Shown piece by piece: positions 10,897-61,845 of a DNA stretch of 64,000 bases. Below the pieces are notes generated by a model. That model ran no database searches and was not told the origin of the DNA. It was given only the letters and a program-made list of their open reading frames with translations. Source of the stretch: Isurus oxyrinchus (taxonomy: Eukaryota); assembly GCA_026770705.1 (NCBI GenBank), contig JANJGN010000038.1:1364001-1428000 (forward strand). Direction: 5' to 3'. How positions within the stretch are numbered: position 1 is the first letter of the stretch; the number at the start of each line of letters is the position of its first letter. The position numbers were made by a program, and so were the translations under genes.

Positions 10897-11217
10897 TTAG
10901 CGATTGCAGGTGTCCAAGCTGATGGATTTCTGAACGAGAGTGTCCTGAGACTTGTATCGGAACAGACACGAGTAGTGATCCTTCGAGTTCCAAGAGCTGA
11001 CAGGGACCCTCAGGTAGCTGCTGATGCTGTAGCTGTTGTCAGCCTCAAGATTAGGTAGATTTGTGGACACTCCGCTCTGCGTCTCAATGCCCCGCGCTTT
11101 CCACGAAAGCTGGGTAGAAGCCCCGAATCAGACAGCTCAGCGTCACTGTTTCAGCTGAAGTTACTTCCTGGCGCGAAGGCGGAAACAATTCCAGTGATGG
11201 CACCTGTAGTTGACGAT
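10897..11217 (-). pseudogene. Ig light-chain constant (C1-set) exon with frameshift
   Basis: TTGCAG acceptor, then DRQLQVPSLELFPPSRQEVTSAETVTLSCLIRGFYPAF. A frameshift occurs at ~11104, after which a second frame reads WKARGIETQSGVSTNLPNLEADNSYSISSYLRVPVSSWNSKDHYSCLFRYKSQDTLVQKSISLDTCNR* (TAA 10899-10897). The near-terminal Cys is typical of L chains. No transmembrane exon was found. Confidence 0.88.
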
Positions 11218-12054
11218 CTGCAACAGATGGTACATAGATGACATGGACTGTCACTGTAAGAGGCATTATTATTGTGGCTTAACGGTATGGTTATCATAGA
11301 CCTTCGGAAAATACCGCACAGAATGAGGCGTCCACCAGTGCCTCTGCCGGCTTTTCAAATAATTATTCATCTTGTCTCAGTCATGTACCCTTTTCCCTTA
11401 GCCCCGTAATAGCGTCCATTCAAATATACATCCCATTCCCGTTTGAAAGTTATTACTGAATCTGTTTTCACCGTCCTCCCATCCGAGCCCTCTAGATCAC
11501 AACAAACCGTTGCATAAAAAGAAAAATAAATCCCGCATGGCCGCTCTGGTTCTTCTTCCATTCGCTTTATATCTGTATTCCGTGAATACCGACTTTCCTA
11601 TCGCTATTGAAGTCCTTAATGGTTTGAATACCTGCATTAAGTTACCCCATAAACGTCGCTGCTCTAAGGAAACAACCCCAGGATTTATAGTCTGTCCACA
11701 GAACTCCCGTCCTGCTTCTCTGGTGGGCTTAGTTATGGGCTTATGATCACACCATTACAATTTCAGGAATTGAATTCAATTACGCTGGAGGCAAACAAGC
11801 TTCCGGATTGTTGTAATAACCAAGTGGCTCACAGGAAATGGACCAACCCCATTCCTACCCGCCTTGTCAACGTGACTCAGTCCCACACTGCGTAGGTAAA
11901 TTTTGGTTCATTGAGGGCGAATAATAATAGGCCACCTTCGCTCTGTAGCCCACTATGTTCAAAATTAAATTATTTCAAAATGCTATGACACCATTATTTA
12001 CTATCACCGCGTAACATTTTCGCCAATATCTTTTAGCTTTCACAATAGTTTGAT

Positions 12055-12352
12055 GGAAAATTCCTCGAATTGCTTGGTGTGAACAATTTGCTAAATAAAA
12101 GGGGAATTTTCCATTTTCGGTTATATATTGGGGAACTCCCAAACAGATATTCCAAATATCTGCCAGCAGTACAAACAAGCAGAGTCCTCGCCGCTGTCAC
12201 ATTTATTTGTTCTACAAAACGTATTCCACCCAATGTGCTTCTGATTCTGCTCCACTCCAGCTGAAAGCGCAGCCGCTCGGTGTGTTTTAGATCAGTGCAC
12301 ATCAAGCCTTGTGCATTTTTGTAAAAATTGATTCGTGTAATATCCTCAGCTG
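12055..12352. promoter_or_regulatory. Candidate J-C intronic enhancer (NF-kB-like sites plus E-boxes)
   Basis: GGAAAATTCC 12055-12064, GGGGAATTTTCC 12101-12112, GGGAACTCCC 12131-12140, and CAGCTG at 12258 and 12347, all 0.85-1.1 kb upstream of the C exon. Confidence 0.45.
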
Positions 12353-14324
12353 CTACCTTTTATTCAGGAGGAGCGCCTTTATTTTTTTTGTAAACGTACC
12401 TACAGCCAGTGGCCAAAATGTGAATCATTAAAAGAAGCATTGCCTGTATTTATTTTCCCTGAAATTGATTACATTGTATTTCTCTATCGCGGAAAATTAG
12501 ATAATGTCTAATCTGCAACTCTGACATTCAAACCGACAAATACAGCACTTTATTGCTGGAAAGATCGAAACCTTTGCACTAACCATATTAAAATTATCAT
12601 GCGCTAACTTAAAAAAAAACTAACCAGAAATGAGCTCTCCAGCGCAAGATCCAACTGATTGACCTACACTTCAGTATCAAAATGTCTTGCAATGAATTTG
12701 GCTATAAATTCGCCCCAGGCGGCGGAACAATACAGACGGCATTGATTCTACCGGCCTTTCTACACAGCGCCTGATATCCTTGTCCATGCAGTTAGTGGAG
12801 CTGAGTATCGGGAGCTGTTTGAATGATGGCCGACAATGACTATTTTCTAGCACTTATCAGTAGCATCAGGAACAATTGAAAGAAAAATAAAATTTCAGCA
12901 ATATTATTCATGCTTTGAACTGTGGGGGAAGTAATTGCACGGGTCACTTTTTGAATTAAAATAGGAAATGCACCCCAGAATATGTTCCCTGCTTTGCATT
13001 CAAAGACAAGTTGGGCATTCACTGGACTTTGAATTGCCATGGATCGAAGAAAAAGGCATCTATAGCCCATCTATATCCCACCACCCTCCACTGAAATGAG
13101 AGCAATTCTTCCCCGTCGGAACAAAAAACAATCGGTGGCAATTTGAAACCTTTTTTTTCGGAATCATTGTCATTTTCTGAAATTAATCCTATTGATGATG
13201 ATGTTCATACGTGGAACATTGCACATTCTTATTTGAACGTTTCTTTGCCTCGGAGCTCCGCTCTAAACTAATGGTTTATGGTTTAAAATAAAATAATACA
13301 TGGCAGCTCCAAATTAAATACATTTTTTTCTCAATGTTGTACTGTAGGAAATTTAAACCCACAACTTTCTGACTCAAACGCCAGAGTGCTACAACTAAAC
13401 CATGGCTGACACAACAGAAATGATACCAAGAGGGAGTGTAACGGCCCTCTGTGTAAACATTAACATCATACTCAGTGTTCCATTCCATTAATATCACAAT
13501 TAAATTATTTCATTCTTACCCTGTCCCACTGTCTTAACCTGCAACTTAAGGTGCAATAACGTCTAGGTTTTTTTAAATAAATACTGATTGACACGAATGA
13601 GCTTTTCCAATGATCATGGCAGAGGTCTGCAGTTTCATTTAATATTTGCCAAGAAGGTCAATGTTCTCAAGCGCTTATACCAGAAAAATGGAGCCGAAAT
13701 ACAAGTTCAGAACAGAAGTAAAAAGTGAAATTTCAAATCCTATAACTTACTGACAACTAATGTTTTTTTTTAAATTATGCTTCATGCTTAACATGTCTGG
13801 AAATTTAGACATTGAATTATACGGTTTGCCAATAAATTAAAGATCGGGTGATTTAATATTTGGTAGCTGTACCTGTTCAGATTTAAAGATTCTATTGTTC
13901 TGATCAATTTCGGTTTATCCTACGGTATACGCTTTTAGTTATTCGAGCCAATGCATTAATATGGAAGTGACGGAAAATACATTCATTGAAGGAATTGTGA
14001 TTGTTGGTTATGCACCGTTCAGCCACAAAACAATAACTGCCCCCTCACGCCGCTGGCACTACGCCCCAGAGCAATAATGCATATGGCTATGTGAGCATAA
14101 ATAGATGTAGAATTGATGAGTGGTGGTAATAAGATAGATTGCTCAGGCGTTGCGGAAATAAATATCCTGTAATAGCAAGTGTCACTCAATGTTAAAATAT
14201 GGTCCAGTTTTAACCAGTTTCACACGGCAATACCAAATAGCTCCCAGAAATAACAAACGTCGTCCAATAATAATGAATAGAGATTAGCACCATCAAACAT
14301 CGCCTACTATTCACCACAATGCAC

Positions 14325-14510
14325 GGTAAGGATAGGAATCCGCCTTGGCAGTGGCGCAAATCAGGCCGTATCGGTGAGGCCGCTGGTTCAGTGCAGCCCC
14401 TGACATTTAGTTCCATTGGCTACAAGGCAACTGACTATTGGCCGCTGGGTAAAAGGCGCGGCCTATCTGATAAAGTCCGTTTCCGCCACCACCTAAGGCG
14501 ATTTTTACCC
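14325..14510. mobile_element. MITE-like element in the J-C intron
   Basis: Imperfect terminal inverted repeats: aatccgccttggcagtggcg ... cgccaccacctaaggcgatt. Confidence 0.4.
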
Positions 14511-14816
14511 CATGGAATCCAAAGAATTTCGGACTCTCTGTTTCGTATCCCGCGAAGTTGAGAATGCTCCTGCATTCCTGACAATAATTTTTATTGGAGC
14601 AACGTTAACGCTTAGCCTCGTCTCAGCTGAACGATCACCGAATTCACCTTTTTTCAACTAATAAAATACCAACTGCCGAGTATCTCAAGCTCTGAAGGAA
14701 ATATTGCCGTCGTGTCGGGCTTGTGACGTTTTTTCACAATGACTGTGGAACATTGTGTAATATTTTGCAATCTAAAATCTTCCTTTAACACAAGCACGGC
14801 CTCAATATTTACTTAC

Positions 14817-15176
14817 CCAGTACGTGTAACTCTGTACCTTTGCCAAAATACTGTCCAGAATCAAAAAGCGAGCAGTAGTAGACAGCCGAGTCCTTCAGCT
14901 CCACTTGATTGACAGTGAGGGAGAAACTTTTCTTTGCGTCGTCTCTAGAATGGGCGAAGCGGTCGGTGAACCCTGAGCCTCGGAGCAGGGCGCCTCCATC
15001 ATCGGTGCTTTTATGGGTCAGGATCCATACCGGTGTCTTCCCCGGCGTCTGTCGGAACCAACGGAGCCATCTATCCCCGATATCTCTGTTCTTTACCCAG
15101 CAGCTTAAGGTGACGGACCCTCCTGGGACGGCAGAGGCAGTTTCGGCTTGGAGCAGTTCGGGAAGTGGACAGACAC
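14817..15176 (-). CDS. Germline-joined V-J exon of Ig light chain (sigma-cart/NS5-like)
   Basis: Open frame with V-set hallmarks: TLSC, WFRQTPG, long CDR2 (THKSTDDGGALLRGSG), FTDRF..SRD, DSAVYYC, then CDR3 SLFDSGQY fused directly to J motif FGKGTELHVL, then G|GTAAGT donor. No RSS between V and J. Isotype is inferred from recalled motifs. Confidence 0.92.
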
Positions 15177-15300
15177 CTGTAAGAATCAGAGTAAGAGTCA
15201 TGAGTTCAGGCCTAAGGTAAAGGGTAAAGGCAGCACGGAACGTTTTGGGTCAATACACTTTTAAATCTTTACAGCAAAATCAGCTCCACGTTATACTCAC

Positions 15301-15346
15301 TGGAGAAACACATTAGCAAGAGCAGCATCATATAAACTGTGTCCAT
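15301..15346 (-). CDS. Ig light-chain-like gene, leader (signal peptide) exon
   Basis: ATG at 15346 reads MDTVYMMLLLLMCFS plus 1 nt (46 nt, phase 1), followed by a GTGAGT donor; the 124-nt intron ends in TTCTTACAG at 15177. Confidence 0.9.
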
Positions 15347-36445: not shown

Positions 36446-36764
36446 ACTGATTATGGTGTTATTGTTTTGATCTTATTATTGCTGCAATTGATGCCCTTTG
36501 GCTACGGTTTCTATGTAATATTGATTTTGAGATTATTTGGCTCTGTTTTTTTTTGAATGCCCAAGTCACAACCTTTTCGGTGAAACAGATGGACTTCACT
36601 TAAATAATTTCACAATGATGAGGCTCGGCTGTTGGTTTCATCAGAATAAATTGTTGCGATATTACTAATTATCAAATAATGGAACCAAAAATGATTAAGT
36701 CTGTAAATTAAGGGTGATTAATATTTTGTTATTGAAGGTTAGTCAGCATTTTGGGTCAAACATG

Positions 36765-37300
36765 GTTATGTGTGTTTTGTGTGTGTGTTACTGTGGGTGT
36801 GTGTGATTGTGTTGGTCTGCGTATTTGTGCGTCTATGTATGCGTGTATTTGTGTGAGTGTGTGTTTCTACATATGTATGTATGTGTCCATTTGTGTATGT
36901 ATATGTGTGTGTTCGTGTGTTAGTATGTATTCGTGTGTGGTTGTGTGTTTCTGTGTGTGTGTGTGTGTGTGTGTGCGTGTGTTTGTGTTTACTTGTACAT
37001 ATCTGTGCATATGTGTGTGTCTGTATACATCTTTGTTTCTGTGCGTGCGTGTCTATGCGTATATGTCCGTTTGTGTATGCAAGCATAGGTGTCCATGTGT
37101 GTGCATGTGTGTTTGTGTTTGTGTGTGTTTATCCGTGAATGTGCTTCTGTGTGTGTGTGTGCACGTGTGCTATTGTGTACCTGCATATTTGTGAGCATAC
37201 GTGTGTGTCTGTGTTTGTGTGTATAAGTGCATCTGTGTTTGTGTGACTGTGTCTGTGCTTTCGTGTGCACCTTTGTGTCTTTGTGTGCATGTGTTCGTGT
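36765..37300. repeat. Compound (TG)n microsatellite
   Basis: TG-rich low-complexity tract that explains the Cys/Val and His/Thr ORFs. Confidence 0.95.
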
Positions 37301-37983
37301 GATCCTCAGTTTGATTTCCATCAGATCGATGTATCAATCAAGCCTATCAATCTGGAACAACGTGAGATACATACCAAGGAAAATCACCCTTAACAGTGTC
37401 CCGCAAACCCCTCCAGTTCAGATAAGTAACTGAAGAGAGACGGAGTAAAGCTACCTTCACACTTTACATTGAAAGATTCCAAGTTCAGGCAGGTCACTGA
37501 CAAAATGCACGGTTCTGGATGGATCAGGAGTCATTACGCCTGAAAATGGGTAATAGATCAGCATTCACTTTGGAATAATGAGACATATTATTTCATTTCA
37601 TTAAATTACTCTGGCCATTTATTTCACATGTTACCTTTATATTTCCTTGGTGTCACACTCATTTCTCAGATTGATGTGTTATTTGTCTCTTTTGTCCGAT
37701 GAAAAGTGAATTCTTGTGCATTCTCCTCACGTCTTTCTTCTACCACTTGTCTCTAGACTGTAGCACAGCACAACATCGGACAGCCAATTCTTGTTAGTAG
37801 GTAATTTAAAAGAAATGCGAAATAGCGTTGTCATTCCTCTTCATGATGCATTAGTATCTAAAATTAAGCCACATCACAGGGGCAGTTGGCAGAGTAAGAA
37901 GATAATTAACATAATGATACGTACGAGGGGAATTACATGTATTATTTGTAGATATAGATGGCATCAATAAATTTATCAGTCTA

Positions 37984-41460: not shown

Positions 41461-41875
41461 CTGTAAGGCAGAGAGAAAGAGAGAGAGTTGGAGAGAGAAG
41501 GACGGAATTAGTGCTGAAATTCCCAGCTACAACATCAGTTTGGTGGTATGGCGGAATGATATGGAATATGGATCATCAATACTTGATTCAACGGTGGAAC
41601 TGATAAGTTTACCAATGTAAAGATAGTACACTAGGCTACAGAGACAAGACACTTGCCCCCTGTAAAAGCCATTACCCAGACAAGCAACCACAGAGACATA
41701 GCTCGGCCATCTTGAGGACACAAAGGGTTGAGTTCTGAGAGAATTCCTTTTAAAAGTTAAGAGAAAGGCACACTATACTATTAAGAAATTGTACTGGATC
41801 GTAAGTACTTAACTTCTTCAAATCAATATTTGTTCGAAAATCAAGATTGTTCAATAACATGGATTTAAAATTTTA

Positions 41876-44236
41876 AAACAAAAACAGAATTACCTGGAAA
41901 AACTCAGCAGGTCTGGCAGCATCGGCAGAGAAGAAAAGAGTTGACGTTTTGAGTCCTCATGACCCTTCGACAGAACTTGATTTCGAGTCCAAGAAAGAGT
42001 TGAAATATAAGCTGGTTTAAGGTGTGTGTGTGGGGGGCGGAGAGATAGAGAGAGAGAGGTGGTTGTGTAGACAAACAAGCAGTGATAGAAGCAGATCATC
42101 AAAAGATGTCAGCGACAATGGTACAAAAGAACACATAGGTGTTAAAGTTAAAGTTGGTGATATTATCTAAACGAATGTGCTAATTAAGAATGGATGGTAG
42201 GGCACTCAAGGTACAGTTCTAGTGGGGGTGGAGGGAGCATAAAAGATTTTAAAATATTTAAAAATAATGGAAATAGGTGGGAAAAGAAAAATCTATAAAA
42301 TTTATAGAGAAAAAAAAGGAAAAAGGGGGAAACAGAAAGGGGGTGGGGATGGGGGAGGGAGCTCACGACCTAAAGTTGTTGAATTCAATATTCAGACCGG
42401 AAGGCTGTAAGGTGCCTAGTCGGAAGATGAGGTGTTGTTCCTCCAGTTTGCGTTGGGCTTCACTGGAACAATGCAGCAAGCCAAGGACAGACATGTGGGC
42501 AAGAGAGCAGGGTGGAGTGTTAAAATGGCAAGCGACAGGGAGGTTTGGGTCATTCTTGCGGACAGACCGCAGGTGTTCTGCAAAGCGGTCGCCCAGTTTA
42601 CGTTTGGTCTCTCCAATGTAGAGGAGACCACATTGGGAGCAACGAATGCAGTAGACTAAGTTGGGGGAAATGCAAGTGAAATGCTGCTTCACTTGAAAGG
42701 AATGTTTGGGCCCTTGGACGGTGAGGAGAGAGGAAGTGAAGGGGCAGGTGTTACATCTTTTGCGTGGGCATGGGGTGGTGCCATAGGAGGGGGCTGAGGA
42801 GTAGGGGGTGATGGAGGAGTGGACCAGGGTGTCCCGGAGGGAGCGATCCCTACGGAATGCCGATAAGGGGGGTGAAGGGAAGATGTGTTTGGTGGTGGCA
42901 TCATGCTGGAGCTGGCGGAAATGGCGGAGGATGATCCTTTGAATGCGGAGGCTGGTGGGGTGATAAGTGAGGACAAGGGGGACCCTATCATGTTTCTGGG
43001 AGGGAGGAGAAGGCGTGAGGGCGGATGCGCGGGAGATGGGCCGGACACGGTTGAGGGCCCTGTCAACGACCGTGGGTGGAAAACCTCGGTTAAGGAAGAA
43101 GGAGGACATGTCAGAGGAACCGTTTTTGAAGGTAGCATCATCGGAACAGATGCGACGAAGGCGAAGGAACTGGGAGAATGGGATGGAGTCCTTACAGGAA
43201 GCGGGGTGTAAGGAGCTGTAGTCGAGGTAGTTGTGGGAGTCGGTGGGTTTGTAATGGATATTGGTGGACAGTCTATCACCAGAGATTGAGACAGAGAGGT
43301 CAAGGAAGGGAAGGGAAGTGTCAGAGATGGACCAGGTGAAAATGATGGAGGGGTGGAGATTGGAAGCAAAATTAATAAATTTTTCCAAGTCCCGACGAGA
43401 GCATGAAGCGGCACCGAAGTAATCATCGATGTACCGGAGAAAAAGTTGTGGAAGGGGGCCGGAGTAGGACTGCAACAAGGAATGTTCCACATACCCCATA
43501 AAGAGACAGGCATAGCTGGGGCCCATGCGGGTACCCATAGCCACACCTTTTATTTGGAGAAAGTGAGAGGAGTTGAAGGAGAAATTGTTCAACGTGAGAA
43601 CAAGTTCAGCCAGACGGAGGAGAGTAGTGGTGGATGGGGATTGTTCGGGCCTCTGTTCGAGGAAGAAGCTAAGGGCCCTCAGACCATCCTGGTGGGGGAT
43701 GGAGGTGTAGAGGGATTGGACGTCCATGGTGAAGAGGAAGCGGTTGGAGCCAGGGAACTGGAAATTGTTGATGTGACGTAAGGTGTCAGAGGAATCACGG
43801 ATGTAGGTGGGAAGGGACTGGACAAGGGGAGAGAGAAGGGAGTCAAGATAACGAGAAATGAGTTCTGTGGGGCAGGAGCAAGCTGAGACGATCGGTCTAC
43901 CGGGGCAGTTCTGTTTGTGGATTTTGGGTAGGAGATAGAAGCGGGCCGTCCGAGGTTGGGCGACTATCAGGTTGGAAGCTGTGGGAGGGAGATCCCCAGA
44001 GGAGATGAGGTCAGTGACAGTCCTGGAAACAATGGCTTGATGTTCAGTGGTGGGGTCATGGTCCAGGGAGAGGTAGGAGGAAGTGTCTGCGAGTTGACAC
44101 TCAGCCTCCGCGAGGTAGAGGTCAGTGTGCCAGACAACAACAGCACCACCCTTGTCAGCGGGTTTGATGACAATGTCAGGGTTGAACCTGAGAGAATGGA
44201 GTGCAGTAAGTTCAGAGAGAGACAGGTTAGAATGGG
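41876..44236 (-). mobile_element. Penelope-like retroelement, 5'-truncated (RT + GIY-YIG)
   Basis: ORF 42363-43727 has RT motifs (MDVQSLYT, GVAMGT, LRYIDD) and a GIY-YIG endonuclease (LVYCIRC..LYIGET..RFAEH); the 3' pseudo-LTR/tail lies at 41876-42360. Confidence 0.93.
42363..43727 (-). CDS. Penelope reverse transcriptase / GIY-YIG endonuclease (partial, uninterrupted)
   Basis: 454-aa open frame with YIDD and GIY-YIG motifs; homology to the copy at 50151-53100 continues upstream to 44236. Confidence 0.88.
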   Translation of the reverse strand: MDVQSLYTSIPHQDGLRALSFFLEQRPEQSPSTTTLLRLAELVLTLNNFSFNSSHFLQIKGVAMGTRMGPSYACLFMGYVEHSLLQSYSGPLPQLFLRYIDDYFGAASCSRRDLEKFINFASNLHPSIIFTWSISDTSLPFLDLSVSISGDRLSTNIHYKPTDSHNYLDYSSLHPASCKDSIPFSQFLRLRRICSDDATFKNGSSDMSSFFLNRGFPPTVVDRALNRVRPISRASALTPSPPSQKHDRVPLVLTYHPTSLRIQRIILRHFRQLQHDATTKHIFPSPPLSAFRRDRSLRDTLVHSSITPYSSAPSYGTTPCPRKRCNTCPFTSSLLTVQGPKHSFQVKQHFTCISPNLVYCIRCSQCGLLYIGETKRKLGDRFAEHLRSVRKNDPNLPVACHFNTPPCSLAHMSVLGLLHCSSEAQRKLEEQHLIFRLGTLQPSGLNIEFNNFRS

Positions 44237-44733
44237 TAAATTTTATACTATTTCACTTATTCATAAGTAATTAATCAAAAGCTGTCGCCTCACACTGAAA
44301 TCCTCACGAATCCACATATTGATAACAATATTTACCCTAGAATAAGCAAGCTCTTCTAAGTGCTGGTAGTGGTAAACTTGAAAAGAGCTTCTTTCACAGA
44401 ATAATATGCCTTTAGTTATATTCTACTCTGATTTAATTTTACTGGTTCGACAACTCCTAGGAGTGAAGCTATTTAATTTCAGGACAGAGCTTTTAGAAGG
44501 TAAAGTTGACTAGGTTATTTTAACGAACTTTTTCTCTTAGTTGATGTTATAAGCTAAAATTAAGTTTGAGTGGGTAGGTTTACCATTCCATGTGGAAAAG
44601 ATTGTATAATCATAAACAGATAGGCATAAAACCTCCTGCCAATTTCTTTATAATCTACTTTACTTCATCCTCCAATGTCAATATCTGCTTCATTAATTCT
44701 TCTTCCTAAAGATACGGTTCTAACTGGAGCTGA

Positions 44734-44772
44734 GGTTTTTGTACGGCGCTGTCGCCCCTTACTACACGTGTG
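44734..44772 (-). other. Recombination signal sequence, 23-bp spacer
   Basis: Directly after the TGT GCT GTA codons: heptamer CACACGT (44772-44766, degenerate), exactly 23 nt, then a perfect nonamer ACAAAAACC (44742-44734). Confidence 0.82.
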
Positions 44773-45020
44773 TACAGCACAGAAGTGTCTGTGAGACTCA
44801 AAGCTGAGATAGTCAGGGGGCTGCTTTTATCCAAGCTTCAACTGACGGCTCTAAATCGACCTTTTTGTTCACCGTTTGTCGACGCCATTATCAGCAACTT
44901 TGGGCTCTGGTTTGGAGGCTTAACGTACCAATATATCACAGGGAATGGGATGGTTGTGCGGCAGTGCATCAATATCATTTTCTGTTCAGCCGGAGTCTCT
45001 GATGGATAAGTTTGTATAAC

Positions 45021-46078
45021 AAAAACAAAATTACCTGGAAAACCTCAGCAGGTCTGGCAGCATCGGCGGAGAAGAAAAGAGTTGACGTTTCGAGTCCTCA
45101 TGACCCTTCGACAGAACTTGATTTCGAGTCCAAGAAAGAGTTGAAATATAAGCTGGTTTAAGGTGTGTGTGTGGGGCGGAGAGAGAGAGAGAGAGGTGGT
45201 TGTGTAGACAAACAAGCAGTGATAGAAGCAGATCATCAAAAGATGTCAGCGACAATAGTACAAAAGAACACATAGGTGTTAAAGTTAAAGTTGGTGATAT
45301 TATCTAAACGAATGTGCTAATTAAGAATGGATGGTAGGGCACTCAAGGTACAGATCTAGTGGGGGTGGAGGGAGCATAAAAGATTTTAAAATATTTAAAA
45401 ATAATGGAAATAGGTGGGAAAAGAAAAATCTATAAAATTTATAGGGAAAAAAAAGGGGAAAAGGGGGAAACAGAAAGGGGGTGGGCATGGGGGAGGGAGC
45501 TCACGACCTAAAGTTGTTGAACTCAATATTCAGACCAGAAGGCTGTAAGGTGCCTAGTCGGAAGATGAGGTGTTGTTCCTCCCCACCCCCTTTCTGTTTC
45601 CCCCTTTTCCCCTTTTTTCTCCCTATAAATTTTATAGATTTTTCTTTTCCCACCTATTTCCATTATTTTTAAATATTTTAAAATCTTTTATGCTCCCTCC
45701 ACCCCCACTAGAGCTGTACCTTGAGTGCCCTACCATCCATTCTTAATTAGCACATTCGTTTAGATAATATCACCAACTTTATCTTTAACACCTATGTGTT
45801 CTTTTGTACCATTGTCGCTGACATCTTTTGATGATCTGCTTCTATCACTGCTTGTTTGTCTACACAACCACCTCTCTCTCTCCGCCCCACACACACACCT
45901 TAAACCAGCTTATATTTCAACTCTTTCTTGGACTCGAAATCAAGTTCTGTCGAAGGGTCATGAGGACTCGAAACGTCAACTCTTTTCTTCTCCGCCGATG
46001 CTGCCAGACCTGCTGAGTTTTTCCAGGTAATTCTGTTTTTCTTTTGGATTTCCAGCATCCGCAGTTTTGTTTTGTTTT
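45021..46078. mobile_element. Palindromic Penelope pLTR insertion with 14-bp TSD
   Basis: 45021-45485 is the near-perfect reverse complement of 45581-46045; TAAGTTTGTATAAC flanks both sides (45007-45020 and 46079-46092). Confidence 0.9.
45943..45981 (+). ncRNA. Hammerhead-like motif (variant core) in Penelope pLTR
   Basis: AGTT-CTGTCGA-A-GGGTC-ATGAG-GACTC-GAAAC-GTC-AACT; stem I is AGTT/AACT and there is a GUC triplet. Confidence 0.45.
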
Positions 46079-47575
46079 TAAGTTTGTATAACGTCTGTTT
46101 AACCTGCAAGACACAAAGTGAGCACTAGAGCAAAGCCACCAGCTCTAATCATGCCCAACAGGTAACTCCGAAATATAGGAGCAGGTGGATGACTTTCAAC
46201 TCTTCAGCCCTGCTCCAAATTCATCTAGTTCTCAATTGGTCTGAAGCCTAAATTTATTTATCCTCCTTAGCCCAATATACCATGATACAATTGTGCTTAG
46301 CTAAGGAACATCTTGAAAATATAGTGAAAAGGTACAAAGAGCACAAACATATATAATAATGAGGCAAGATACCCCTTGAAAAATTAGAGTCTAAATGTGG
46401 CAGGGAACAAGGGGGTCTACAGTGACTGGTGCAAGTTCCGTAGCGACAGAGTTTATCCACGCAATTTGACACACACAACAAAAACTGAGTTTCATTTCTA
46501 AAGGGAGGAAACTGAAAATCAGAAAAGTTGCATTACTGTTACATTGAGACCCGTTGGATCACACGTGAGAATCTCCAACCACAGTTCTAGTCTTCATTTC
46601 GATAAATTTGTTTTTACTCGCATGACAAGAAATTTGAGATCATAATGGCTAGATATCTTGCAGACGCTGTGTCTCTTATCTCGAGAAATGAGTAAAGTGG
46701 GTTACACCCTGATAAATATTTTTGGGTTACAGAAGTGTTTGTTAAAATATATATAGGGCAAACGTATCAACTTGTGGGAATTACTAGAAGTGGTTGTATC
46801 AATATAAGATAGATGAAGAGTTATTGGGGCATTCTCTTGCTTAGCGTAATCAGCCGCACAGACCTGCTGGGCTGAGTGCCCTGTTTCTGTGCTGTATATC
46901 CTGTAATTCTACTTAATGCTTTGAATGAATCAAATCCAAATACTTTGGAGGCAAGAGCTTCGGATTCATAACCCTCTGCATGGAAGAAATTCAGTTTCTC
47001 CTCAAATATAGCCTACCTCTAATTGTAATATTATACACCCTCATCCTTTATTCTCCGAAAGAAGAATTATTTTTCTGTCAAATAGTTTAACACTAAATCA
47101 CCTCGAACAGACCTCCTTTCAATATTCTATAGTCAATGGAATAAACTGACAATTCTGCAACCTCTCCACACAATTTAATATTCTGTCCCTAGTATCCTGC
47201 AGGTCAATCTGTGCTGTATTAACTCGGAAGCAACTTTATGTTGCCTGTGGTGAGGAGCACAGAGCTGAATGCATTCATGTAGATACCGTCTGAGCAGACT
47301 ACTGATGCCTAACTTTTGCCGCTACCTGTCCCAGTTATCTTCCAATAAGGACTTACCTCCTTTCGCCATTCCGATTGTATTTTCTTCACCTCTACACGAT
47401 TTCAATGATTGTAAAAGAGGACAATTTAGTATCATTAAAATCCTTCTTTTCTCCGTGGTTAAAGTTTGAAGATTCAAGGTGAATGCCCTCACACCTGCCC
47501 ACAGTAAGCTCAATCTGCCACATTGTCTCTATTCATTTATTTTATCAACTTCCTTCTTACATCTACATACATAAT

Positions 47576-48349: not shown

Positions 48350-49150
48350 ACCCTATAACACCTAATAAAACTAACCCAATTAAAACATCAGCAGCTAACT
48401 TTCCCAACTGGCGAACCACCCCGTTACTGTAGCCCGCCAGGAATCCTTGTTATAAACACTGCTCAACCTTTCCCCAACTTTCTTTATTTCTCACACTTTA
48501 TCCATAACATGCTGTTCCAGGTCAATAATATTCTCAGAAACATCAGGCACATAGGCGCAGCATTCTGAGCCTATTATGGCACAAGTGCCACCTTTTTCAG
48601 CTAGGAGGAAATCAAGGGCCATTCTATTTTGTTGAGCTGTCAGGCGTAGGGCTAACATTTCAGCAGTGGTGTCTGAAATCTGTTTCTGGGTCTCAATAAA
48701 AGCATTTTCCGTTGAATTGGCAAATTTTTCAAGCGCAGCTGCCAGGTTGATAACCTCTCGGGAGTTACGCACAGTTCCACAAGAGGGGATAGCAATCATC
48801 CAGCATCGTTCAGATTTTGAGATGTTACGACGATGGAGACGCAGATGCGGGTGAATATCTGATGCTACAGGGCTGCCAGACAACGAGTGGCTTGGACCCA
48901 ATCTTCCTTCCCTTTAATCTTCAGGGCTGTACGAGTTGTTAGCAGCACCAGATAGGGTCCTTTCCACTCTCTCATGCAATTCAGCTGTTGTTTTGCATTG
49001 AGGAAAATGAGTACAAATCCAACATTCAGTCCGATGAACTTGCAAGGCTACGGCCTGTATTTGTTGAACCACAGAATTGGTATTCCATGCCCCTGCAAGG
49101 ACCATGCAGGACAGGATCCAAATCATTCCGATGGCTCAGTTAAAGTTCTT
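48350..49150 (-). pseudogene. ERV env (gamma-type TM), degraded and short
   Basis: Hydrophobic N-terminus and CWIC motif (ORF 48914-49126); basic cleavage site RLHRR; immunosuppressive domain QQNRMALDFLLAEKGGTCAIIGSECC (CX6CC). Confidence 0.85.
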
Positions 49151-49840
49151 GCACAAGCACTTCCGTCCGAGGTCAGCGTCTGTTTGACGTGCGATGTGTG
49201 GATCCACAAGTGCATCCTTCAATCTTCATGGCTGTATGGGTGGTGAGCAGGACTTGGAAAGGTTCTTCCCATCGAGGTTCCAAACAGTTCTTTCTACTGA
49301 AGGTCTTTACCAGGACTAGGTCCCCGGGCTGGTATTGATGGCAGTCTTCAGTGGTGGGCTTTTTCTGAGCTTCTACTACCTGTATATGTGAGCTCTTGAG
49401 ACAGTTACTGTGAGAGCGCATAGTCATGAGCGCCAAGGGTAGAGCTTCAGGCCCTTTCAAACTGGTTTCTTCACATAATTTAGATAGTTTGTTTTTCAGA
49501 ATACTATTTTGTCCTGCCATCGCTCCAGTAGACCGGGGGTGGTATGGGCAGGAAAGGTGATGGTTGCATTGTAAGGCCTTCAACAGTTCCTTTATCACTT
49601 CAGCAGTAAAATGAACAATTTTACAACAACAGCATCATTGCATTGGGTGGGATACGCCTCCACCCATCGCAAGAACAAACACACTAGAATTAAAACATAT
49701 TTATATCCCATACATTTAGGCATTTGTATAAAGTCCATTTGTAGGTGTGCAAATGGGCCCCATGGCTGGGGTCCCGTACCAGCAGTCACTGTGGGCGTCT
49801 TACCTGGGTTATGTCATTGACATAGGTATGACAGGTATTA
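49150..49840 (-). pseudogene. ERV integrase (class I, epsilon/gamma-like), frameshifted
   Basis: PFAHLQMDFIQMPKCMGYKYVLILVCLFLRWVEAYP, CPYHPRSTG, QPGDLVLVK, LEPRWEEPFQVLLTT motifs. Confidence 0.88.
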
Positions 49841-49845
49841 CTAAT

Positions 49846-52800
49846 ATAATTACCTGGAAAAACTCAGCAGGTCTGGCAGCATTGGCGGAGAAGAAAAGAG
49901 TTGATGTTTCGAGTCCTCATGACCCTTCGACAGAACTTGAGTTTGAATCCAAGAAAGAGTTGAAATATAAGCTGGTTTAAGGTGTGTGGGGGGGGGGGGG
50001 AGAGAGAAAGAGAGAGACAGAGGTGGAGTGGGGTGTGGTTGTAGGGACAAACAAGCAGTGATAGAAGCAGATCATCAAAAGATGTCAACAACATAGGTGT
50101 TAAAGTTAAAGTTGGTGATATTATCTAAACAAATGTGCTAATTAAGAATGGATTTCTCGGACTGCTGTTCCCGTCACATTCTGAAATCCACACTCAGTGC
50201 CATGCGGCGCCATATGAACACACTCGACCTCTCCCTCCAGCAGCACCGCCGTACCCTTTTTCAAAGCTGCACGTGCCCCCAGTTTCATTTTATCCTTCGG
50301 CTCATCCGACGCCTCAACAAGAAACTTTTTCTCTTTCTCCCAAGTGCTAAGGAACACAAGCTCCAACAACTCATTGACACCAACACCCATCTAGTACCCC
50401 CCACCCCGGCCTGTCCCTCCGTCCCCACCCCATCTTCCAATCCCAACACCAGCCATGTATTCACTATACCCCCTGACCTTCCCCTCTCCGATGCTGAACG
50501 TTCAGTGCTCAGCAAAGGACTTAGTTTCATACCCTTACGCCCTCACCTCAATGAATTTCGGGCTCGGCACGATGCTGAACTCTTCTTCTGCCGTCTTCGT
50601 CTCCAGGCTCACTTCTTTGGGCAGGAGTCCTCTCCCAGTTCAACGGATCCTTTGACCCATCTCCAATATTCTCCCTCCACCTGGACCCCTCCTTCTGGAT
50701 TCTTACCTTCTCTTGATCTTTTCATTGAGAACTAGCAGCACGACATTAGTCGTCTCAATTTCTCCGCTCCTCTCACCCATTCTAACCTGTCTCTCTCTGA
50801 ACTTACTGCACTCCATGCTTTCAGGTCCAACCCTGACATTGTCATCAAACCCACTGACAAGGGTGGTGCTGTTGTTGTCTGGCGCACTGACCTCTACCTT
50901 GCGGAGGCTGAGCGTCAACTCACAGACACTTCCTCCTACCCCTCCCTGGACCATGACCCCACCACTGAACATCAAGCCATTGTTTCCAGGACTGTCACTG
51001 ACCTCATCTCCTCTGGGAATCTCCCTCCCACAGCTTCCAACCTGATAGTCGCCCAACCTCGGATGGCCCGCTTCTATCTCCTACGCAAAATCCACAAACA
51101 GAACTGCCCCGGTAGACCGATCGTCTCAGCTTGCTCCTGCCCCACAGAACTCATTTCTCGTTATCTTGACTCCCTTCTCTCTCCCCTTGTCCAGTCCCTT
51201 CCCACCTACATCCGTGATTCCTCTGACACCTTACGTCACATCAACAATTTCCAGTTCCCTGGCCCCAACCGCTTCCTCTTCACGATGGACGTCCAATCCC
51301 TCTACACCTCCATCCCCCACCAGGATGATCTGAGGGCCCTTAGCTTCTTCCTCGAACAGAGGCCTGAAAAATCCCCATCCGCAAACTACTCTCCTCCGTC
51401 TGGCTGAACTTGTTCTCACGCTGAACAATTTCTCCTTCAACTCCTCTCACTTCCTCCAAATAAAAGGTGTGGCTATGGGTACCCACATGGGCCCCAGCTA
51501 CACCTGTCTCTTTATGGGGTACGTGGAACATTCCTTGTTCCAGTCCTCCTCCGGCCCCCTTCCACAACTCTTTCTCCGGTACATCGATGATTACTTCAGT
51601 GCTGCTTCATCCTCTCGTCGGGACTTAGAAAAATTTATTGATTTTGCTTCCAATCTCCACCCCTCCATCATTTTCACGTGGTCCATCTCTGACACTTCCC
51701 TTCCCTTCCTTGACCTCTCTGTCTCAATCTCTGGTGATAGACTGTCCACCAATATTCATTACAAACCCACCGACTCCCACAGCTACCTCGACTACAGCTC
51801 TTCACACCCCGCTTCCTGTAAGGACTCCATCCCATTCTCTCAGTTCCTTCGCCTCCGTTGCATCTGTTCTGATGATGCTACCTTCAAAAACAGTTCCTCT
51901 GACATGTCCTCCTTCTTCCTTAACCGAGGTTTTCCACCCACAGTCGTTGATAGGGCCCTCAACCGTGTCCGGCCCATCTCCCGTGAATCTGCCCTCATGC
52001 CTTCTCCTTCCTCCCAGAAACATAATATGCTCCCCCTTGTCCTCACTTATCACCCCACCAGCCTCCGCATTCAAAGGATCATCTCCGCCATTTCCAGCAT
52101 GATGCCACCACCAAATACATCTTCCCTGCACCCCCCCGGCGGCATTCCGTAGGGATCATTCCCTCCGGGACACCCTGGTCCACTCCTCCATCACCCCCTA
52201 CTCCTCAACCCCCTCCTTTGGCACCTCCCCATGCCCACGCAAAAGATGCAACACCTGCCCCTTCACTTCCTCTCTCCTCACTATCCAAGGGCCCAAACAA
52301 TCCTTTCAAGTGAAGCAGCATTTCACTTGCATTTCCCCCAACTTAGTCTACTGCATTCGTTGCTCCCAATGTGGTCTCCTCTACATTGGAGAGACCAAAC
52401 GTAAACTGGGCGACCACTTTGCAGAACACCTACGGTCTGTCCGCAAGAATGACCCAAACCTCCCTGTTGCTTGCCATTTTAACACTCCACCCTGCTCTCT
52501 TGCCCACATGTCTGTCCTCGGTTTGTTGCATTGTTCCAGTGAAGCCCAACGCAAACTGGAGGAACAGCATCTCATCTTCCGACTAGGCACTTTACAGCCT
52601 TCCGGACTGAATATTGAATTCAACAACTTTAGATCTTGTCCACCCTCATCCATCCCCACCCCCTTTCTGTTTCTTCCCCCTTCCTTTTGTTTTTTCCAAT
52701 AATTTATACAGACTTTTCTTTTCCCAAGTATTTCCATTATTTTTAAATCTTTTATGCCCCCCCACCACCACTAGAGCTATACTTTGGGTGCCCTACCATC

Positions 52801-53100
52801 CATTCTTAATCAGCACATTCGTTTAGATAATATCACCAACCTCAACACCTCTGTGTGCTTTTGTTCTTCAGTCTGTGACATCTTTTGATTATCTGCTCCT
52901 ATCACTGCTTGCTTGTCCCTGCAACCACACCACCCCTCCACTTCTCCCCCCCCCCACCTTAAACCATCTTATATTTCACCCGTCTTCTTGGATTCAACCA
53001 GTACTGCTGAAGGGTCCCGAGGACTCGAAACGTCAACTTTTTTCTTCTCCGTCAATGCTGCCAGACCTGCTGAATTTTTCCAGGTAATTCTGTTATTGTT
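49846..53100 (+). mobile_element. Penelope-like retroelement, near full length, with inverted 5' pLTR
   Basis: Inverted tail fragment 49846-50150, then a broken ORF (50148-50735, 51063-51407, 51469-52152, 52310-52702) closely similar to the 42363-43727 protein, then the 3' tail. Confidence 0.92.
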
Positions 53101-53644: not shown

Positions 53645-54626
<982 letters not shown>

Positions 54627-60130: not shown

Positions 60131-60294
60131 GGAGGTTCCCTTTGCTTTTTTGGGACTTTGTTGCTGATTTGAGCTTCTTTTAGTTTGATTGGACCACATG
60201 TTTGGGGAAAGAATGTCCCAAAGAAACTTGAATTGTCTGTTTTGAATTTCTATCCTGTACTTACAGTGATGGTTTTTGTAAACTCCTTTTACAG

Positions 60295-61845
60295 GGGAGA
60301 AGAGGGAGATGATTTGCAGACGGGAAACTCAAACCAAACATCACAACAAGATCTGACCGCGTCACTCGATTCATCAAGACCTAAATATCATTGGACATTG
60401 ACTGTGAAAGGAGGTATATTTGTCTGTTCTGTCTGTGGGCAAAGATTTGAAACATCAGTGTGANNNNNNNNNNNNNNNNNNNNNNNNNNNNNNNNNNNNN
60501 NNNNNNNNNNNNNNNNNNNNNNNNNNNNNNNNNNNNNNNNNNNNNNNNNNNNNNNNNNNNNNNNNNNNNNNNNNNNNNNNNNNNNNNNNNNNNNNNNNNN
60601 NNNNNNNNNNNNNNNNNNNNNNNNNNNNNNNNNNNNNNNNNNNNNNNNNNNNNNNNNNNNNNNNNNNNNNNNNNNNNNNNNNNNNNNNTGATTGTAGAAG
60701 GAGCTTTAACCTGTTACACCACCTGAAACAAAGATCTCACCATGCACAGCGGGGAGAAACTGTGCAAGTGTACTGTGTGTGGACAAGAATTCAACTGATT
60801 ATCCAACCTGGAGAGGCACAGGAACATCGACACCATGGAGAAACCGTGGAACTGCGGGGATTGTGGGAAGAGATTCAGATCCCCCTCTGAGCTGGAAACT
60901 CATGGACGCATTCACACTGGGGAGAGACCGTTTATCTGTTGCGATTGTGGGAAGGGATTCGCTCGACTAACTAACCTCACTTCACACCAACTTGTTCATT
61001 CAGACATGAGACCTTTTAAATGTTGTGACTGTGAGAAGAGCTTTAAAAGCAAAAAGAATCTGCTAATACACCAGCGAGTTCACACTGGGGAGAGGCCATT
61101 CACCTGCTTTGACTGTGGGAAGGGATTCGCTCAGTTATCCAACCTGCTGCGACACCAGAGAGTTCACACTGGAGAGAGGCCATTCACCTGCTTTGACTGT
61201 GGGAAGGGATTCGCTCAGTTATCCAACCTGCTGCGACACCAGAGAGTTCACACTGGAGAGAGGCCATTCACCTGCTTTGACTGTGGGAAGGGATTCGCTC
61301 AGTTATCCAACCTGCTACGACACCAGAGAGTTCACACTGCAGAGAGGCCATTCACCTGCTCCAAGTGTGGGAAGGGATTCACTCAGTTAAGTACCCTCAC
61401 TTCACATCAACTTGTTCACTCTGACAAGAGACCTTTTAAATGTTCTGATTGTGAAAAGTGCTTTAAAAGCGGAAAGATTCTGCTGACACACCAGCAAGTT
61501 CACACTGGGCAGAAACCATTCAACTACTCCAAGTGTGGGAAGAGGTTCATTCAACTAACCTAGCTCACTTCACATCAACGTGTTCACTCTGAAAAGAGAC
61601 CTTTTAAGCATGCCGACTGTGTGAAAAGCTATAAAAGCAAAATGGATCTGCTAACACACCAGCGAGTTCACACTGGAGAATGGTCATTGACCTGCTCTGT
61701 GTGTGGGAAGGGATTCATTCACACATCCCTCCGGCTGAAACACCAGCGAGTTCACACTGGAGAGAGACTGTTCACCTGCTCCGTGTGTGGGAAGGGATTC
61801 AGTCATTCATCCACCCTGCAGTCACACCAGTGTATTCACAAGTGA
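60295..61845 (+). CDS. C2H2 zinc-finger array gene (probably truncated or pseudogenic)
   Basis: TTTTACAG acceptor at 60294; N gap 60464-60688; ORF 60835-61563 has 8 complete fingers; in-frame TAG at 61561, with fingers continuing to TGA 61845; AATAAA at 61991. Confidence 0.8.

What the first reader, a model, noticed from the sequence alone, without database searches (positions are those of the whole stretch)
44734..46152. Hidden TCR V-alpha/delta-like segment with 23-RSS, absent from the ORF track
Seen: manual translation of the minus strand across the Penelope insertion gives a full V domain (C-x10-W, WYVKPPNQSPKLLI, GRF, DKSSPLTISALSLTDTS, CAV), directly followed by heptamer, 23 nt and a perfect nonamer. 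Known: TCR Va/Vd segments carry 23-RSS and have this FR3 style. It is a pseudogene (two stops, a deletion and an insertion), and no J or C partner is visible in the window.
Basis: partly seen in the sequence, partly recalled or inferred. Interest (0 to 1): 0.78.

Follow-up and report, generated by a model that had tools for sequence, protein, structure and literature searches.

The report
Dead shark TCR-type V gene segment
This is a broken, non-working copy of a shark T-cell-receptor-type variable gene segment, still carrying its recombination signal and split by a jumping-gene insertion; it is an ordinary gene relic, mildly notable for where it lies.

Summary
On the minus strand, 46152-44734 holds a leader-like ORF, a V-set exon and a 23-spacer recombination signal (RSS). 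The exon is cut after its fifth mature codon by a 1,058-nt inverted dimer of Penelope-like-element (PLE) tails with an exact 14-nt target-site duplication.

The V has five lesions:
- TAA at 46101-46099
- the PLE insertion
- TGA at 44840-44838, at a codon that is Arg in intact relatives
- a 10-nt loss in FR3 that shifts Cys-Ala-Val out of frame
- a heptamer that is only CACACGT

The closest intact relative is a catshark protein, 70% identical (E 7.5e-21). An AlphaFold model of it matches only T-cell-receptor entries in PDB: 42 of 42 Foldseek rows, alpha chains where named. The alpha/delta-type reading is therefore supported, but chain type is not proven. A small tree excludes the family from kappa/lambda and does not place it inside TRAV.

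Contigs of a related species carry both stops and the 10-nt loss, and probably lack the PLE. The gene was likely dead before the insertion.

The window has no other TCR element. The V lies 30 kb upstream of a germline-joined Ig light-chain gene, in the same orientation. Earlier first-stage notes of this scan report an intronless TCR V family elsewhere in this genome; this copy may belong to it. Low interest.

The parts
46102..46152 (-). Leader-like ORF (ATG at 46152-46150, 17 codons, MIRAGGFALVLTLCLAG), contiguous and in frame with the V exon. It is probably a single-exon leader. It could instead be the pyrimidine-rich 3' end of a leader intron ending in ...tgtcttgcag.
   Evidence: Read (mean Kyte-Doolittle hydropathy 1.77). 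It occupies the same position as the leaders of P0002 and P0004. Its similarity to those leaders is not significant: 18% and 47% of shuffles score as high.
46099..46101 (-). In-frame TAA between leader and FR1 (lesion 1). It aligns with Val of the '...SVTDEE' stretch of P0002.
   Evidence: It is also present in the related species: contig X6 record 24 covers 46079-46459 and all 6 of its differences lie elsewhere.
46079..46098 (-). First 20 nt of the mature V (Thr-Asp-Val-Ile-Gln-Thr-Ty..). The last 14 nt (46079-46092) are one copy of the target-site duplication.
45021..46078 (.). Penelope-like-element insertion (lesion 2), 1,058 nt. It consists of two 5'-truncated 3' tails in inverted orientation (about 45021-45582 and 45580-46045), with a 33-35-nt one-sided 'tail' at 46044-46078.
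   Evidence: Inverted arms of 301 nt (99% complementary) and 172 nt (98%). The arms are 97.2% and 95.8% identical to the 3' end of the neighbouring PLE copy at 41875-42444. That copy's ORF has RVT_1 (E 2.2e-5) and GIY-YIG (E 3.9e-4) matches. Both junctions are confirmed by contigs of the source species (X1 records 1 and 8). The architecture matches the description in PMC8557442 (passages read).
45007..45020 (-). Second copy of the 14-nt target-site duplication. The V reading resumes here.
   Evidence: family D2: 2 copies, 100% identical, spacing 1072.
44841..45020 (-). V exon from FR1 to early FR3 (60 codons). It holds the first Cys, CDR1, Trp, FR2 (WYVKPPNQSPKLLI), CDR2 and GRFRAVS.
   Evidence: 70% identical to P0002 (E 7.5e-21) and 56% to P0004 (E 2.8e-12). 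Pfam V-set E 8.2e-4.
44838..44840 (-). In-frame TGA (lesion 3), at a codon that is Arg in both intact relatives.
   Evidence: Also present in the related species: X6 record 22 and X9 record 30 cover it with differences only at 44842 and 44884.
44781..44837 (-). Rest of FR3 (SLDKSSPLTISALSLTDTS). A 10-nt loss between 44785 and 44784 (lesion 4) shifts the frame.
   Evidence: Matches P0002 residues 87-112 at E 1.2e-4. A 91%-alike contig of the related species has 10 extra letters behind 44784 (table 4). With these, the reading becomes Thr-Asp-Thr-Ala-Thr-Tyr-Phe-Cys-Ala-Val, as in P0002 (my reading by hand).
44773..44781 (-). Second Cys, Ala, Val (the germline CDR3 start), out of frame with the rest of the exon.
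44734..44772 (-). 23-RSS: heptamer CACACGT (44772-44766), 23-nt spacer, perfect nonamer ACAAAAACC (44742-44734). The heptamer is degenerate (lesion 5). The related 91% copy has one more base there and ends in ...ACAGTG.
   Evidence: 1 match against 0.01 expected. tables 3 and 4 (places 44767, 44770, 44771).

Best explanation
This is a pseudogene of a rearranging antigen-receptor V gene segment, most likely of T-cell-receptor alpha/delta type. It belongs to a small elasmobranch V family whose leader seems to be encoded in the same exon as the V region.

When intact, such a segment would be transcribed from its own promoter. RAG would cut it at its 23-spacer signal to join a 12-signal J (alpha) or D (delta) segment.

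Here it cannot work. It has a stop codon at the leader/V boundary, a stop in FR3, a 10-nt frameshifting loss just before the second cysteine, and a damaged heptamer. A 1.06-kb inverted pair of Penelope-like retroelement tails is inserted into FR1.

The point lesions and the deletion are shared with a related species, so they are older (shown). The retroelement insertion is probably specific to this species' lineage and recent (inferred).

In this window the V is isolated, with no other TCR V, J or C. It lies 30 kb upstream of an Ig light-chain gene, so it is either an orphon or lies at a gene-poor edge of a locus (inferred).
For: Anatomy and signal:
- The anatomy was read directly.
- The RSS pattern is unique in the window: 1 match against 0.01 expected.
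- The arms are 97% and 96% identical to the neighbouring PLE.

Relatives:
- Exhaustive HMMER search gave P0002 (Scyliorhinus torazame GCB75380.1) at 70% identity, E 7.5e-21, and P0004 at 56%, E 2.8e-12.
- Both relatives read through downstream sequence whose codons fit a heptamer and a nonamer (my codon reasoning).

TCR-alpha type:
- PDB phmmer ranks 2-11 are TCR alpha chains.
- Per-domain phmmer scores of the family: TRAV-like 33-43 bits, kappa 30-36, lambda 29-31, the neighbouring IgL V 15-16.
- A kappa/lambda clade with 95/90 support excludes the family.
- Foldseek gave 42 of 42 listed rows as TCR entries. VIA-align gave 48 of 50 titles naming a TCR, Z 12.0-12.8.
- ESM Atlas neighbours are TVA11 and TRAV41.

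Age:
- Contigs of the related species cover both stops and the deletion site with no difference there.
- One of its contigs stops matching exactly at the TSD (46079) with 57 letters to spare.
Against: - Chain type is not proven. The tree of 31 V domains leaves the family unplaced relative to TRAV (forks at 45/69), and it held no TRB, TRG or IGH V sequences.
- The margin of TRAV-like over kappa scores is only 2-7 bits.
- The AlphaFold model had mean pLDDT 64, and 4 of the 7 alignment rows were turtle TRAV-like sequences, which may bias it. The control model built from the family alone was unusable (pLDDT 38.5), so it was not searched.
- No TCR V, J or C lies in the 64-kb window. No CTCF-type site of the kind noted behind TCR V signals elsewhere in this genome lies near it.
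- No transcript joining this family to a TCR constant region was seen.
- The empty site in the related species is inferred from one contig end. The expected joint was not among the joints listed (15 shown, 1,362 not shown).
- The single-exon leader could be an intron end that happens to be open.
Confidence: 0.75

Rival explanations
1. It is a relic V of an Ig light-chain cluster of lambda type (V with 23-RSS). It would have been left behind upstream of the light-chain gene that now sits germline-joined at 10.9-15.3 kb.
For: - It has the same strand as an Ig light-chain VJ-C gene and lies only 30 kb upstream of it.
- FR2 (QSPKLLI) matches kappa chains best (first row).
- A 23/12 arrangement is the lambda type, per PMC5985310 (passages read).
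- Per-domain scores to kappa are only 2-7 bits below those to TRAV-like domains.
Against: - FR3 is GRFRAVSRSL.KSS..LTIS, not the light-chain RFSGS.SG pattern seen in the kappa and lambda rows.
- Only two codons follow the second Cys before the heptamer.
- The kappa/lambda clade excludes the family at 95/90 support.
- The neighbouring light-chain V is among the most distant V domains compared, at 15-16 bits.
- No antibody chain appears among 42 Foldseek rows or in the VIA-align list, although antibodies are far more numerous than TCRs in PDB (the abundance is from general knowledge).
Confidence: 0.08
2. It is a V segment of another chain that also uses a 23-RSS (TCR beta, TCR gamma or Ig heavy chain), or of a shark-specific receptor, and not alpha/delta.
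For: - The 23-RSS does not discriminate among these chains.
- The tree contained no beta, gamma or heavy-chain V sequences.
- TCR beta chains appear in the PDB list at E 1e-3, over residues 14-45.
- Chicken TRGV1 also has single-exon leaders (PMC10972964, passages read).
Against: - The chains named in the structural and sequence lists are alpha chains: 1b88_A and 1h5b_C are V-alpha domains, and 6vrm_D, 7n6e_G and 8ye4_G are named as alpha.
- The coding end Cys-Ala-Val is the usual alpha/delta ending (general knowledge, not tested here).
Confidence: 0.12
3. It is a chance resemblance, or a non-rearranging V-set gene followed by a chance RSS-like string.
For: The heptamer is poor (4 of 7 positions). 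Pfam V-set on the fragment is below the curated cut-off.
Against: - E 7.5e-21 to P0002 in 1.84 billion proteins.
- The RSS pattern has 0.01 expected matches, and the one match sits exactly after Cys-Ala-Val.
- Both relatives carry the same downstream signal in translation.
Confidence: 0.01

Closest known systems
TRAV/TRDV germline V gene segments (TCR alpha/delta locus) and their pseudogenes
   Same: V-set exon with first Cys, Trp and second Cys. FR3 of the GRF...L.KSS..L.IS...L.DT..Y.CAV style. A coding end two codons after Cys, followed by a 23-RSS. Best sequence and fold matches are TCR alpha V domains.
   Different: It is dead, with five lesions. No TCR locus context is visible. The leader appears unsplit. 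Membership in alpha/delta rather than another chain is not proven.
[quoted passage not shown]
   Same: Leader and V appear to lie in one exon, followed by a 23-RSS. [quoted passage not shown]
   Different: The animal is a shark, and no sequence relationship to chicken TRAV1 was tested. Here the unsplit leader rests on one genomic copy with a stop codon in it, plus ORF calls of unknown origin for the relatives.
Orphon V segments (V genes outside their main locus, known for human IG and TR genes)
   Same: An isolated V with an RSS and without J or C partners within 64 kb. It is non-functional.
   Different: Its position relative to the main TCR loci of this genome could not be determined, so 'orphon' is a hypothesis.
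Penelope-like element insertions (EN+ PLEs)
   Same: 5'-truncated copies in inverted arrangement, a one-sided 30-40-bp tail, a target-site duplication, and a source copy encoding RT plus GIY-YIG (PMC8557442 passages).
   Different: Nothing unusual. The RT and GIY-YIG matches are below Pfam's curated cut-offs (24.7 against 29.6 bits; 21.1 against 22.6).

Membership tests
Rearranging antigen-receptor V gene segment | V-set Ig domain with first Cys, conserved Trp and second Cys | tested here: met
   Cys-x10-Trp and Cys-Ala-Val were read. Pfam V-set E 8.2e-4 on the fragment. The relatives score 45 and 51 bits against a 26-bit cut-off.
Rearranging antigen-receptor V gene segment | RSS (heptamer, 12- or 23-nt spacer, nonamer) directly 3' of the coding end | tested here: met
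   CACACGT, a 23-nt spacer and ACAAAAACC at 44772-44734. One match against 0.01 expected. The heptamer is degenerate (4 of 7).
Rearranging antigen-receptor V gene segment | Split leader (L-PART1, intron, L-PART2) | tested here: inconclusive
   An in-frame ATG and a 17-codon hydrophobic ORF abut the V exon. The same stretch also ends in a good splice acceptor with 11 nt before FR1. No upstream leader exon was identified.
Functional V gene (as opposed to a pseudogene) | Open reading frame from leader to coding end | tested here: not met
   TAA at 46101-46099, TGA at 44840-44838, a 10-nt loss at 44785/44784 and a 1,058-nt insertion.
TRAV/TRDV | Closest to TCR alpha/delta V domains in sequence and fold | tested here: met
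   The margins over kappa are small in sequence, and the fold model may be biased by its alignment.
TRAV/TRDV | Groups with TRAV/TRDV in a phylogeny | tested here: inconclusive
   the family pair has 99/99 support, is excluded from a 95/90 kappa/lambda clade, and its placement among TRAV-like rows is unresolved. The row set was taken from hits to the query and lacked beta, gamma and heavy-chain V sequences. One of 32 extracted domains was dropped as frame-broken.
TRAV/TRDV | Located in the TRA/TRD locus | not testable with these tools
   The window holds no other TCR V, J or C.
TRAV/TRDV | Used with J-alpha/C-alpha or D/J/C-delta in transcripts | not tested
   No V-J-C transcript of the family was found among the 17 hits or. 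Clustering of the libraries could hide such transcripts.
Ig light chain V (lambda type) | Light-chain FR3 pattern, a longer germline CDR3, and grouping with IGK/IGL V | tested here: not met
   FR3 and the coding end were read. The kappa/lambda clade excludes the family at 95/90.
Penelope-like element insertion | RT plus C-terminal GIY-YIG in the element family; 5'-truncated tandem or inverted copies; one-sided tail | tested here: met
   The RT and GIY-YIG matches are both present but below curated cut-offs. The architecture is as described in PMC8557442.

The most novel reading that the evidence does not exclude
Sharks may have a TCR-type V family whose leader and V lie in one exon. A recent chicken paper calls this layout unique to chicken V-alpha-1. 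RSS-bearing copies of the family may be scattered outside the V arrays, here beside an Ig light-chain cluster. Copies could spread this way by retroposition of spliced germline V transcripts that run through the RSS, or by segmental duplication. Either route would place recombination-competent TCR V segments next to Ig genes, as raw material for the Ig/TCR mixing already known in sharks.
Probability: 0.12. Interest if true: 0.55.

Novelty: new member of a known kind. Interest (0 to 1): 0.25.

Why it matters
By itself it matters little. V pseudogenes and retroelement hits are common in antigen-receptor regions.

It is useful in three ways:
- It gives a dated example: the gene died first, and the PLE insertion came later in one lineage.
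- It is a marker that TCR-type V segments with an RSS occur next to an Ig light-chain cluster in a shark genome.
- It is one more possible member of an apparently single-exon-leader V family, which other first-stage notes of this scan report elsewhere in this genome.

The last two points would need locus-level and transcript data before they count for anything.

Tried and rejected
Searches and tests that gave nothing usable:
- Word-index protein searches found nothing new. The 60-aa piece had no candidate. P0002 found only itself among 22 candidates. A family profile found only P0004, P0002 and one weak eel protein among 3,540 candidates.
- The scan's own index by sequence was blank twice.
- Paper search for three short peptide motifs of the family found 0 papers. 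A search for shark + TCR + orphon found 3 papers, none about sharks' own orphons to judge by titles and abstracts.
- I found no paper describing single-exon-leader V genes in sharks. The V-gene tables and alignments of PMC10972964 and PMC5931798 could bear on this.
- The leader's similarity to the relatives' leaders is not significant.
- No CTCF-type site lies near the V: one match in the whole window, at 19754, against 4.85 expected.
- The promoter scan uses a bacterial consensus and is not relevant to a shark gene. I make nothing of it.
- The control fold built from the family-only alignment was too poor to search (pLDDT 38.5).
- The J scan found no free J segment.
- The second V-like region is the joined light-chain V, not a sister copy.

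I considered reading the V as part of the light-chain cluster and rejected it for the reasons given under rival explanations.

I considered a retrocopy origin. No poly(A) tract or flanking repeat around the V unit was seen, and the family is old enough that none would be expected, so this stays untested.
Full report
**What is there**

I read 46400-44500 on the minus strand and translated the three frames of 45022-44700.

An ATG at 46152-46150 opens 17 hydrophobic codons (MIRAGGFALVLTLCLAG). An in-frame TAA follows at 46101-46099, then Thr-Asp and the start of a V domain (Val-Ile-Gln-Thr-Ty...).

After 46079 the reading is interrupted. It resumes at 45020 and runs for 60 codons through:
- the first Cys
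- a 10-residue CDR1 stretch
- Trp
- FR2 (WYVKPPNQSPKLLI)
- CDR2
- GRFRAVS

It then meets TGA at 44840-44838. The same frame continues as SLDKSSPLTISALSLTDTS. The second Cys, Ala and Val (44781-44773) lie in another frame.

Directly behind them are CACACGT, 23 nt and a perfect ACAAAAACC, together spanning 44772-44734. The pattern CAC-N27-ACAAAAACC occurs once in the window on both strands, against 0.01 expected from 100 shuffles. The bare nonamer occurs twice against 0.93 expected. So it is the combination and its position that count.

**The interruption**

The repeat finder gives an exact 14-nt direct repeat at 45007-45020 and 46079-46092. Between the copies it finds inverted arms of 301 nt (99% complementary) and 172 nt (98%).

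BLAST inside the window shows each arm is the 3' end of the Penelope-like element next door:
- 45021-45582 is 97.2% identical to 41880-42444.
- 45580-46045 is 95.8% identical to 42349-41875.

The ORF of that neighbouring element (42363-43727, minus strand) has RVT_1 (E 2.2e-5) and GIY-YIG (E 3.9e-4) matches. Both are below Pfam's curated cut-offs, but both are present.

About 33-35 nt (46044-46078) at one end belong to neither arm. The passages I read of PMC8557442 describe Penelope-like insertions in just this way: heavy 5' truncation, an adjacent inverted 5'-truncated copy, and a one-sided tail of 30-40 bp. It is a textbook one.

**Is it a V gene, and of what kind?**

Pfam V-set on the 60-aa piece alone gives E 8.2e-4 and 20 bits, under the 26-bit cut-off.

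The exhaustive HMMER search of 1.84 billion representatives gave 17 hits at E up to 0.001.
- Two hits are close. P0002 is 135 aa, 70% identical, E 7.5e-21, and is named 'hypothetical protein scyTo_0018210' of the catshark Scyliorhinus torazame. P0004 is 152 aa, 56% identical, E 2.8e-12, and is known only from Logan assemblies.
- Two higher- or similar-scoring rows (P0001, P0003) are long internal repeats that I take as noise.
- The rest are multi-V gene models. By their names or their look they are TCR-alpha type (toad, hamster, turtle, tortoise, gar, lizard) or kappa/lambda type (hake, monkey, sturgeon, an scFv).

Both close relatives pass Pfam V-set, at 45 and 51 bits. Both are ORFs that run past the second Cys into residues whose codons fit a heptamer and a nonamer (...TQC... 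and ...YKNL / ...VQKL). That fit is my own codon reasoning, since I could not see their DNA.

P0002 has FR3 GRFRAVSRSLEKSSSLTISSLSLTDTATYFCVV. This shows that the TGA here stands at an Arg codon, and that the window's copy lacks the Ala-Thr-Tyr codons before Phe-Cys.

**Chain type**

Evidence for alpha/delta type:
- phmmer of the piece against PDB lists ten TCR alpha chains at ranks 2-11 (E 4.9e-5 to 1.8e-4, residues 2/8-57). The top row and the many kappa rows align only around FR2.
- I cut 32 V domains by pattern from the stored hits. Against these, the two family members score 33-43 bits with TRAV-like domains, 30-36 with kappa, 29-31 with lambda, and 15-16 with the light-chain V of this same window.
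- An AlphaFold model of P0002 was built from a 7-row alignment (mean pLDDT 64, core blocks 81-87). Its Foldseek matches in PDB are TCR entries in 42 of 42 listed rows. On VIA-align re-ranking, 48 of 50 titles name a TCR, with Z 12.0-12.8, all tied within 1.
- Where a chain is named, in a title or, it is an alpha chain.
- The ESM Atlas neighbours of P0002 are 'TVA11' and 'T cell receptor alpha variable 41'.

Evidence against, or limits:
- PDB phmmer with whole P0002 is dominated by multi-domain scFv totals. Single alpha chains (about 40-43 bits) and single kappa chains (about 40 bits) come out nearly equal.
- The tree used 31 of the 32 domains; I dropped one frame-broken hake domain. The family pair has 99/99 support, and a kappa/lambda clade with 95/90 support excludes it. 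Its position among TRAV-like rows is unresolved.
- The tree's rows were all hits to my own query and included no beta, gamma or heavy-chain V sequences.
- Four of the seven rows in the fold's alignment were turtle TRAV-like sequences.
- The control fold from the family alone failed (pLDDT 38.5).

I put alpha/delta type at roughly three in four.

**History of the lesions**

One read-laying run placed Logan contigs of the source species (A) and a related species (B, two individuals from two studies) on 44300-46500.

In species A, contigs cross both insertion junctions: record 1 reaches 45033 and record 8 starts at 46054.

In species B:
- The flanks are present with 1-3% differences.
- The contigs that cover the TAA, the TGA and the deletion site show no difference at those places. 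Record 24's six differences are all listed elsewhere. Records 22, 29 and 30 have only 1-2 differences, also elsewhere.
- The two stops and the 10-nt loss therefore predate the split of the two species.
- Record 24 (438 letters) stops matching exactly at 46079, the edge of the duplicated 14-mer, with 57 letters left over. An empty site would give this result. The corresponding joint was not among the 15 joints shown (1,362 not shown), so absence of the insertion in B is an inference.

Species B also has a second contig of lower depth that is 91% like 44511-44814. It carries ten extra letters behind 44784 and one extra base in the heptamer (table 4). With the ten letters, the reading by hand becomes Thr-Asp-Thr-Ala-Thr-Tyr-Phe-Cys-Ala-Val, as in P0002. 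The heptamer then ends in ...ACAGTG. It also shows that the heptamer here is damaged.

I cannot tell whether that contig is a paralogue or something else. Its depth is only 4-7% of the main contigs' depth in both individuals.

**Surroundings**

phmmer searches with five V proteins against all stop-free six-frame pieces of the window found only two V-like places. One is this V. The other is the ORF at 15249-14812.

That second place is a germline-joined light-chain VJ (Pfam V-set E 3.1e-18) with a C exon at about 11220-10940. It lies on the same strand, 30 kb downstream of the V. First-stage notes already flag it.

A J-motif scan found four hits. The only real J is the one already joined, and none has a signal.

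The rest of the window is:
- Penelope-like copies (41.9-44.3 kb and 50.1-53.1 kb)
- a retroviral envelope fragment (48491-48901; TLV_coat E 6.9e-7)
- C2H2 zinc-finger ORFs (about 53.8-54.4 kb and 60.2-61.6 kb)
- a CA-rich microsatellite at about 36.8-37.3 kb

The V therefore looks isolated.

**The leader**

The ATG and its 17 hydrophobic codons are contiguous and in frame with the V. They sit where P0002 and P0004 have their leaders.

Eight first-stage notes of this scan, unchecked, report an 'intronless leader-V' TCR family with an intact 23-RSS on other pieces of this genome.

From the passages I read:
- PMC10972964 says the single-exon leader is unique to chicken V-alpha-1, and that most chicken TRGV1 members share it.

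A shark family of this kind would therefore be a modest novelty. From this locus alone the case is weak:
- The same 50 nt end in a good splice acceptor, with the usual 11 nt before FR1.
- The leader's similarity to the relatives' leaders is not significant.
- I cannot tell whether the relatives' ORFs come from genomic DNA or from spliced RNA.

**Verdict**

This is a dead TCR-type, most likely alpha/delta-type, V gene segment with a recognisable 23-RSS. It was inactivated first by point lesions and a small deletion, and later hit by a Penelope-like element.

It does nothing now. It is a new member of a known kind and of low interest. The open points worth a look are its genomic position beside an Ig light-chain gene and the possible single-exon-leader family.

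Noticed in passing
window 10940-15345, minus strand: An Ig light-chain gene with V and J already joined in the germline. It has a leader exon at about 15345-15300, a VJ exon at 15178-14817 (Pfam V-set E 3.1e-18) and a C exon at about 11220-10940. The C reading seemed to break after ...GFYPAFVESAGH. It is already the subject of two first-stage notes.
   Followed up: partly
window 44511-44814, as seen in runs X6 and X9: The related species has a second contig that is 91% alike (315 letters, the same in two individuals from two studies). It keeps the 10 nt lost here and has a better heptamer end. Its depth is only 4-7% of the main contigs' depth, so it is unclear whether it is a paralogue or something else.
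   Followed up: partly
window 44300-44524 and 44596-44846, run X15: A run guessed to be RNA, from the source species, has low-depth contigs (about 2) over the V's 3' part, the RSS and the flank, in germline configuration. This could be a sterile transcript or carried-over DNA.
   Followed up: no
window 41875-44270 (minus) and 50148-53100 (plus): Two long Penelope-like element copies in opposite orientation flank the V region. The first has a 454-aa ORF with RT and GIY-YIG matches and is 96-97% identical to the insertion's arms.
   Followed up: partly
window 48491-49598, minus strand: Endogenous-retrovirus remnants. One ORF is an envelope TM-like piece (TLV_coat E 6.9e-7). An adjacent 141-aa ORF looks integrase-like by eye; I did not test it.
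   Followed up: partly
window 53779-54364 and 60185-61563, plus strand: ORFs with arrays of C2H2 zinc fingers (repeated HTGERPF linkers). The second array is interrupted by the N stretch at 60464-60688.
   Followed up: no
window 36750-37320: A long CA/TG-rich microsatellite. It produces many weak RSS-like hits in a naive scan.
   Followed up: no
window 46172-46177, minus strand: A TATA-like string (TATATT) lies about 20-25 nt upstream of the leader ATG. It was found only by a bacterial-type scan, and I make nothing of it.
   Followed up: no
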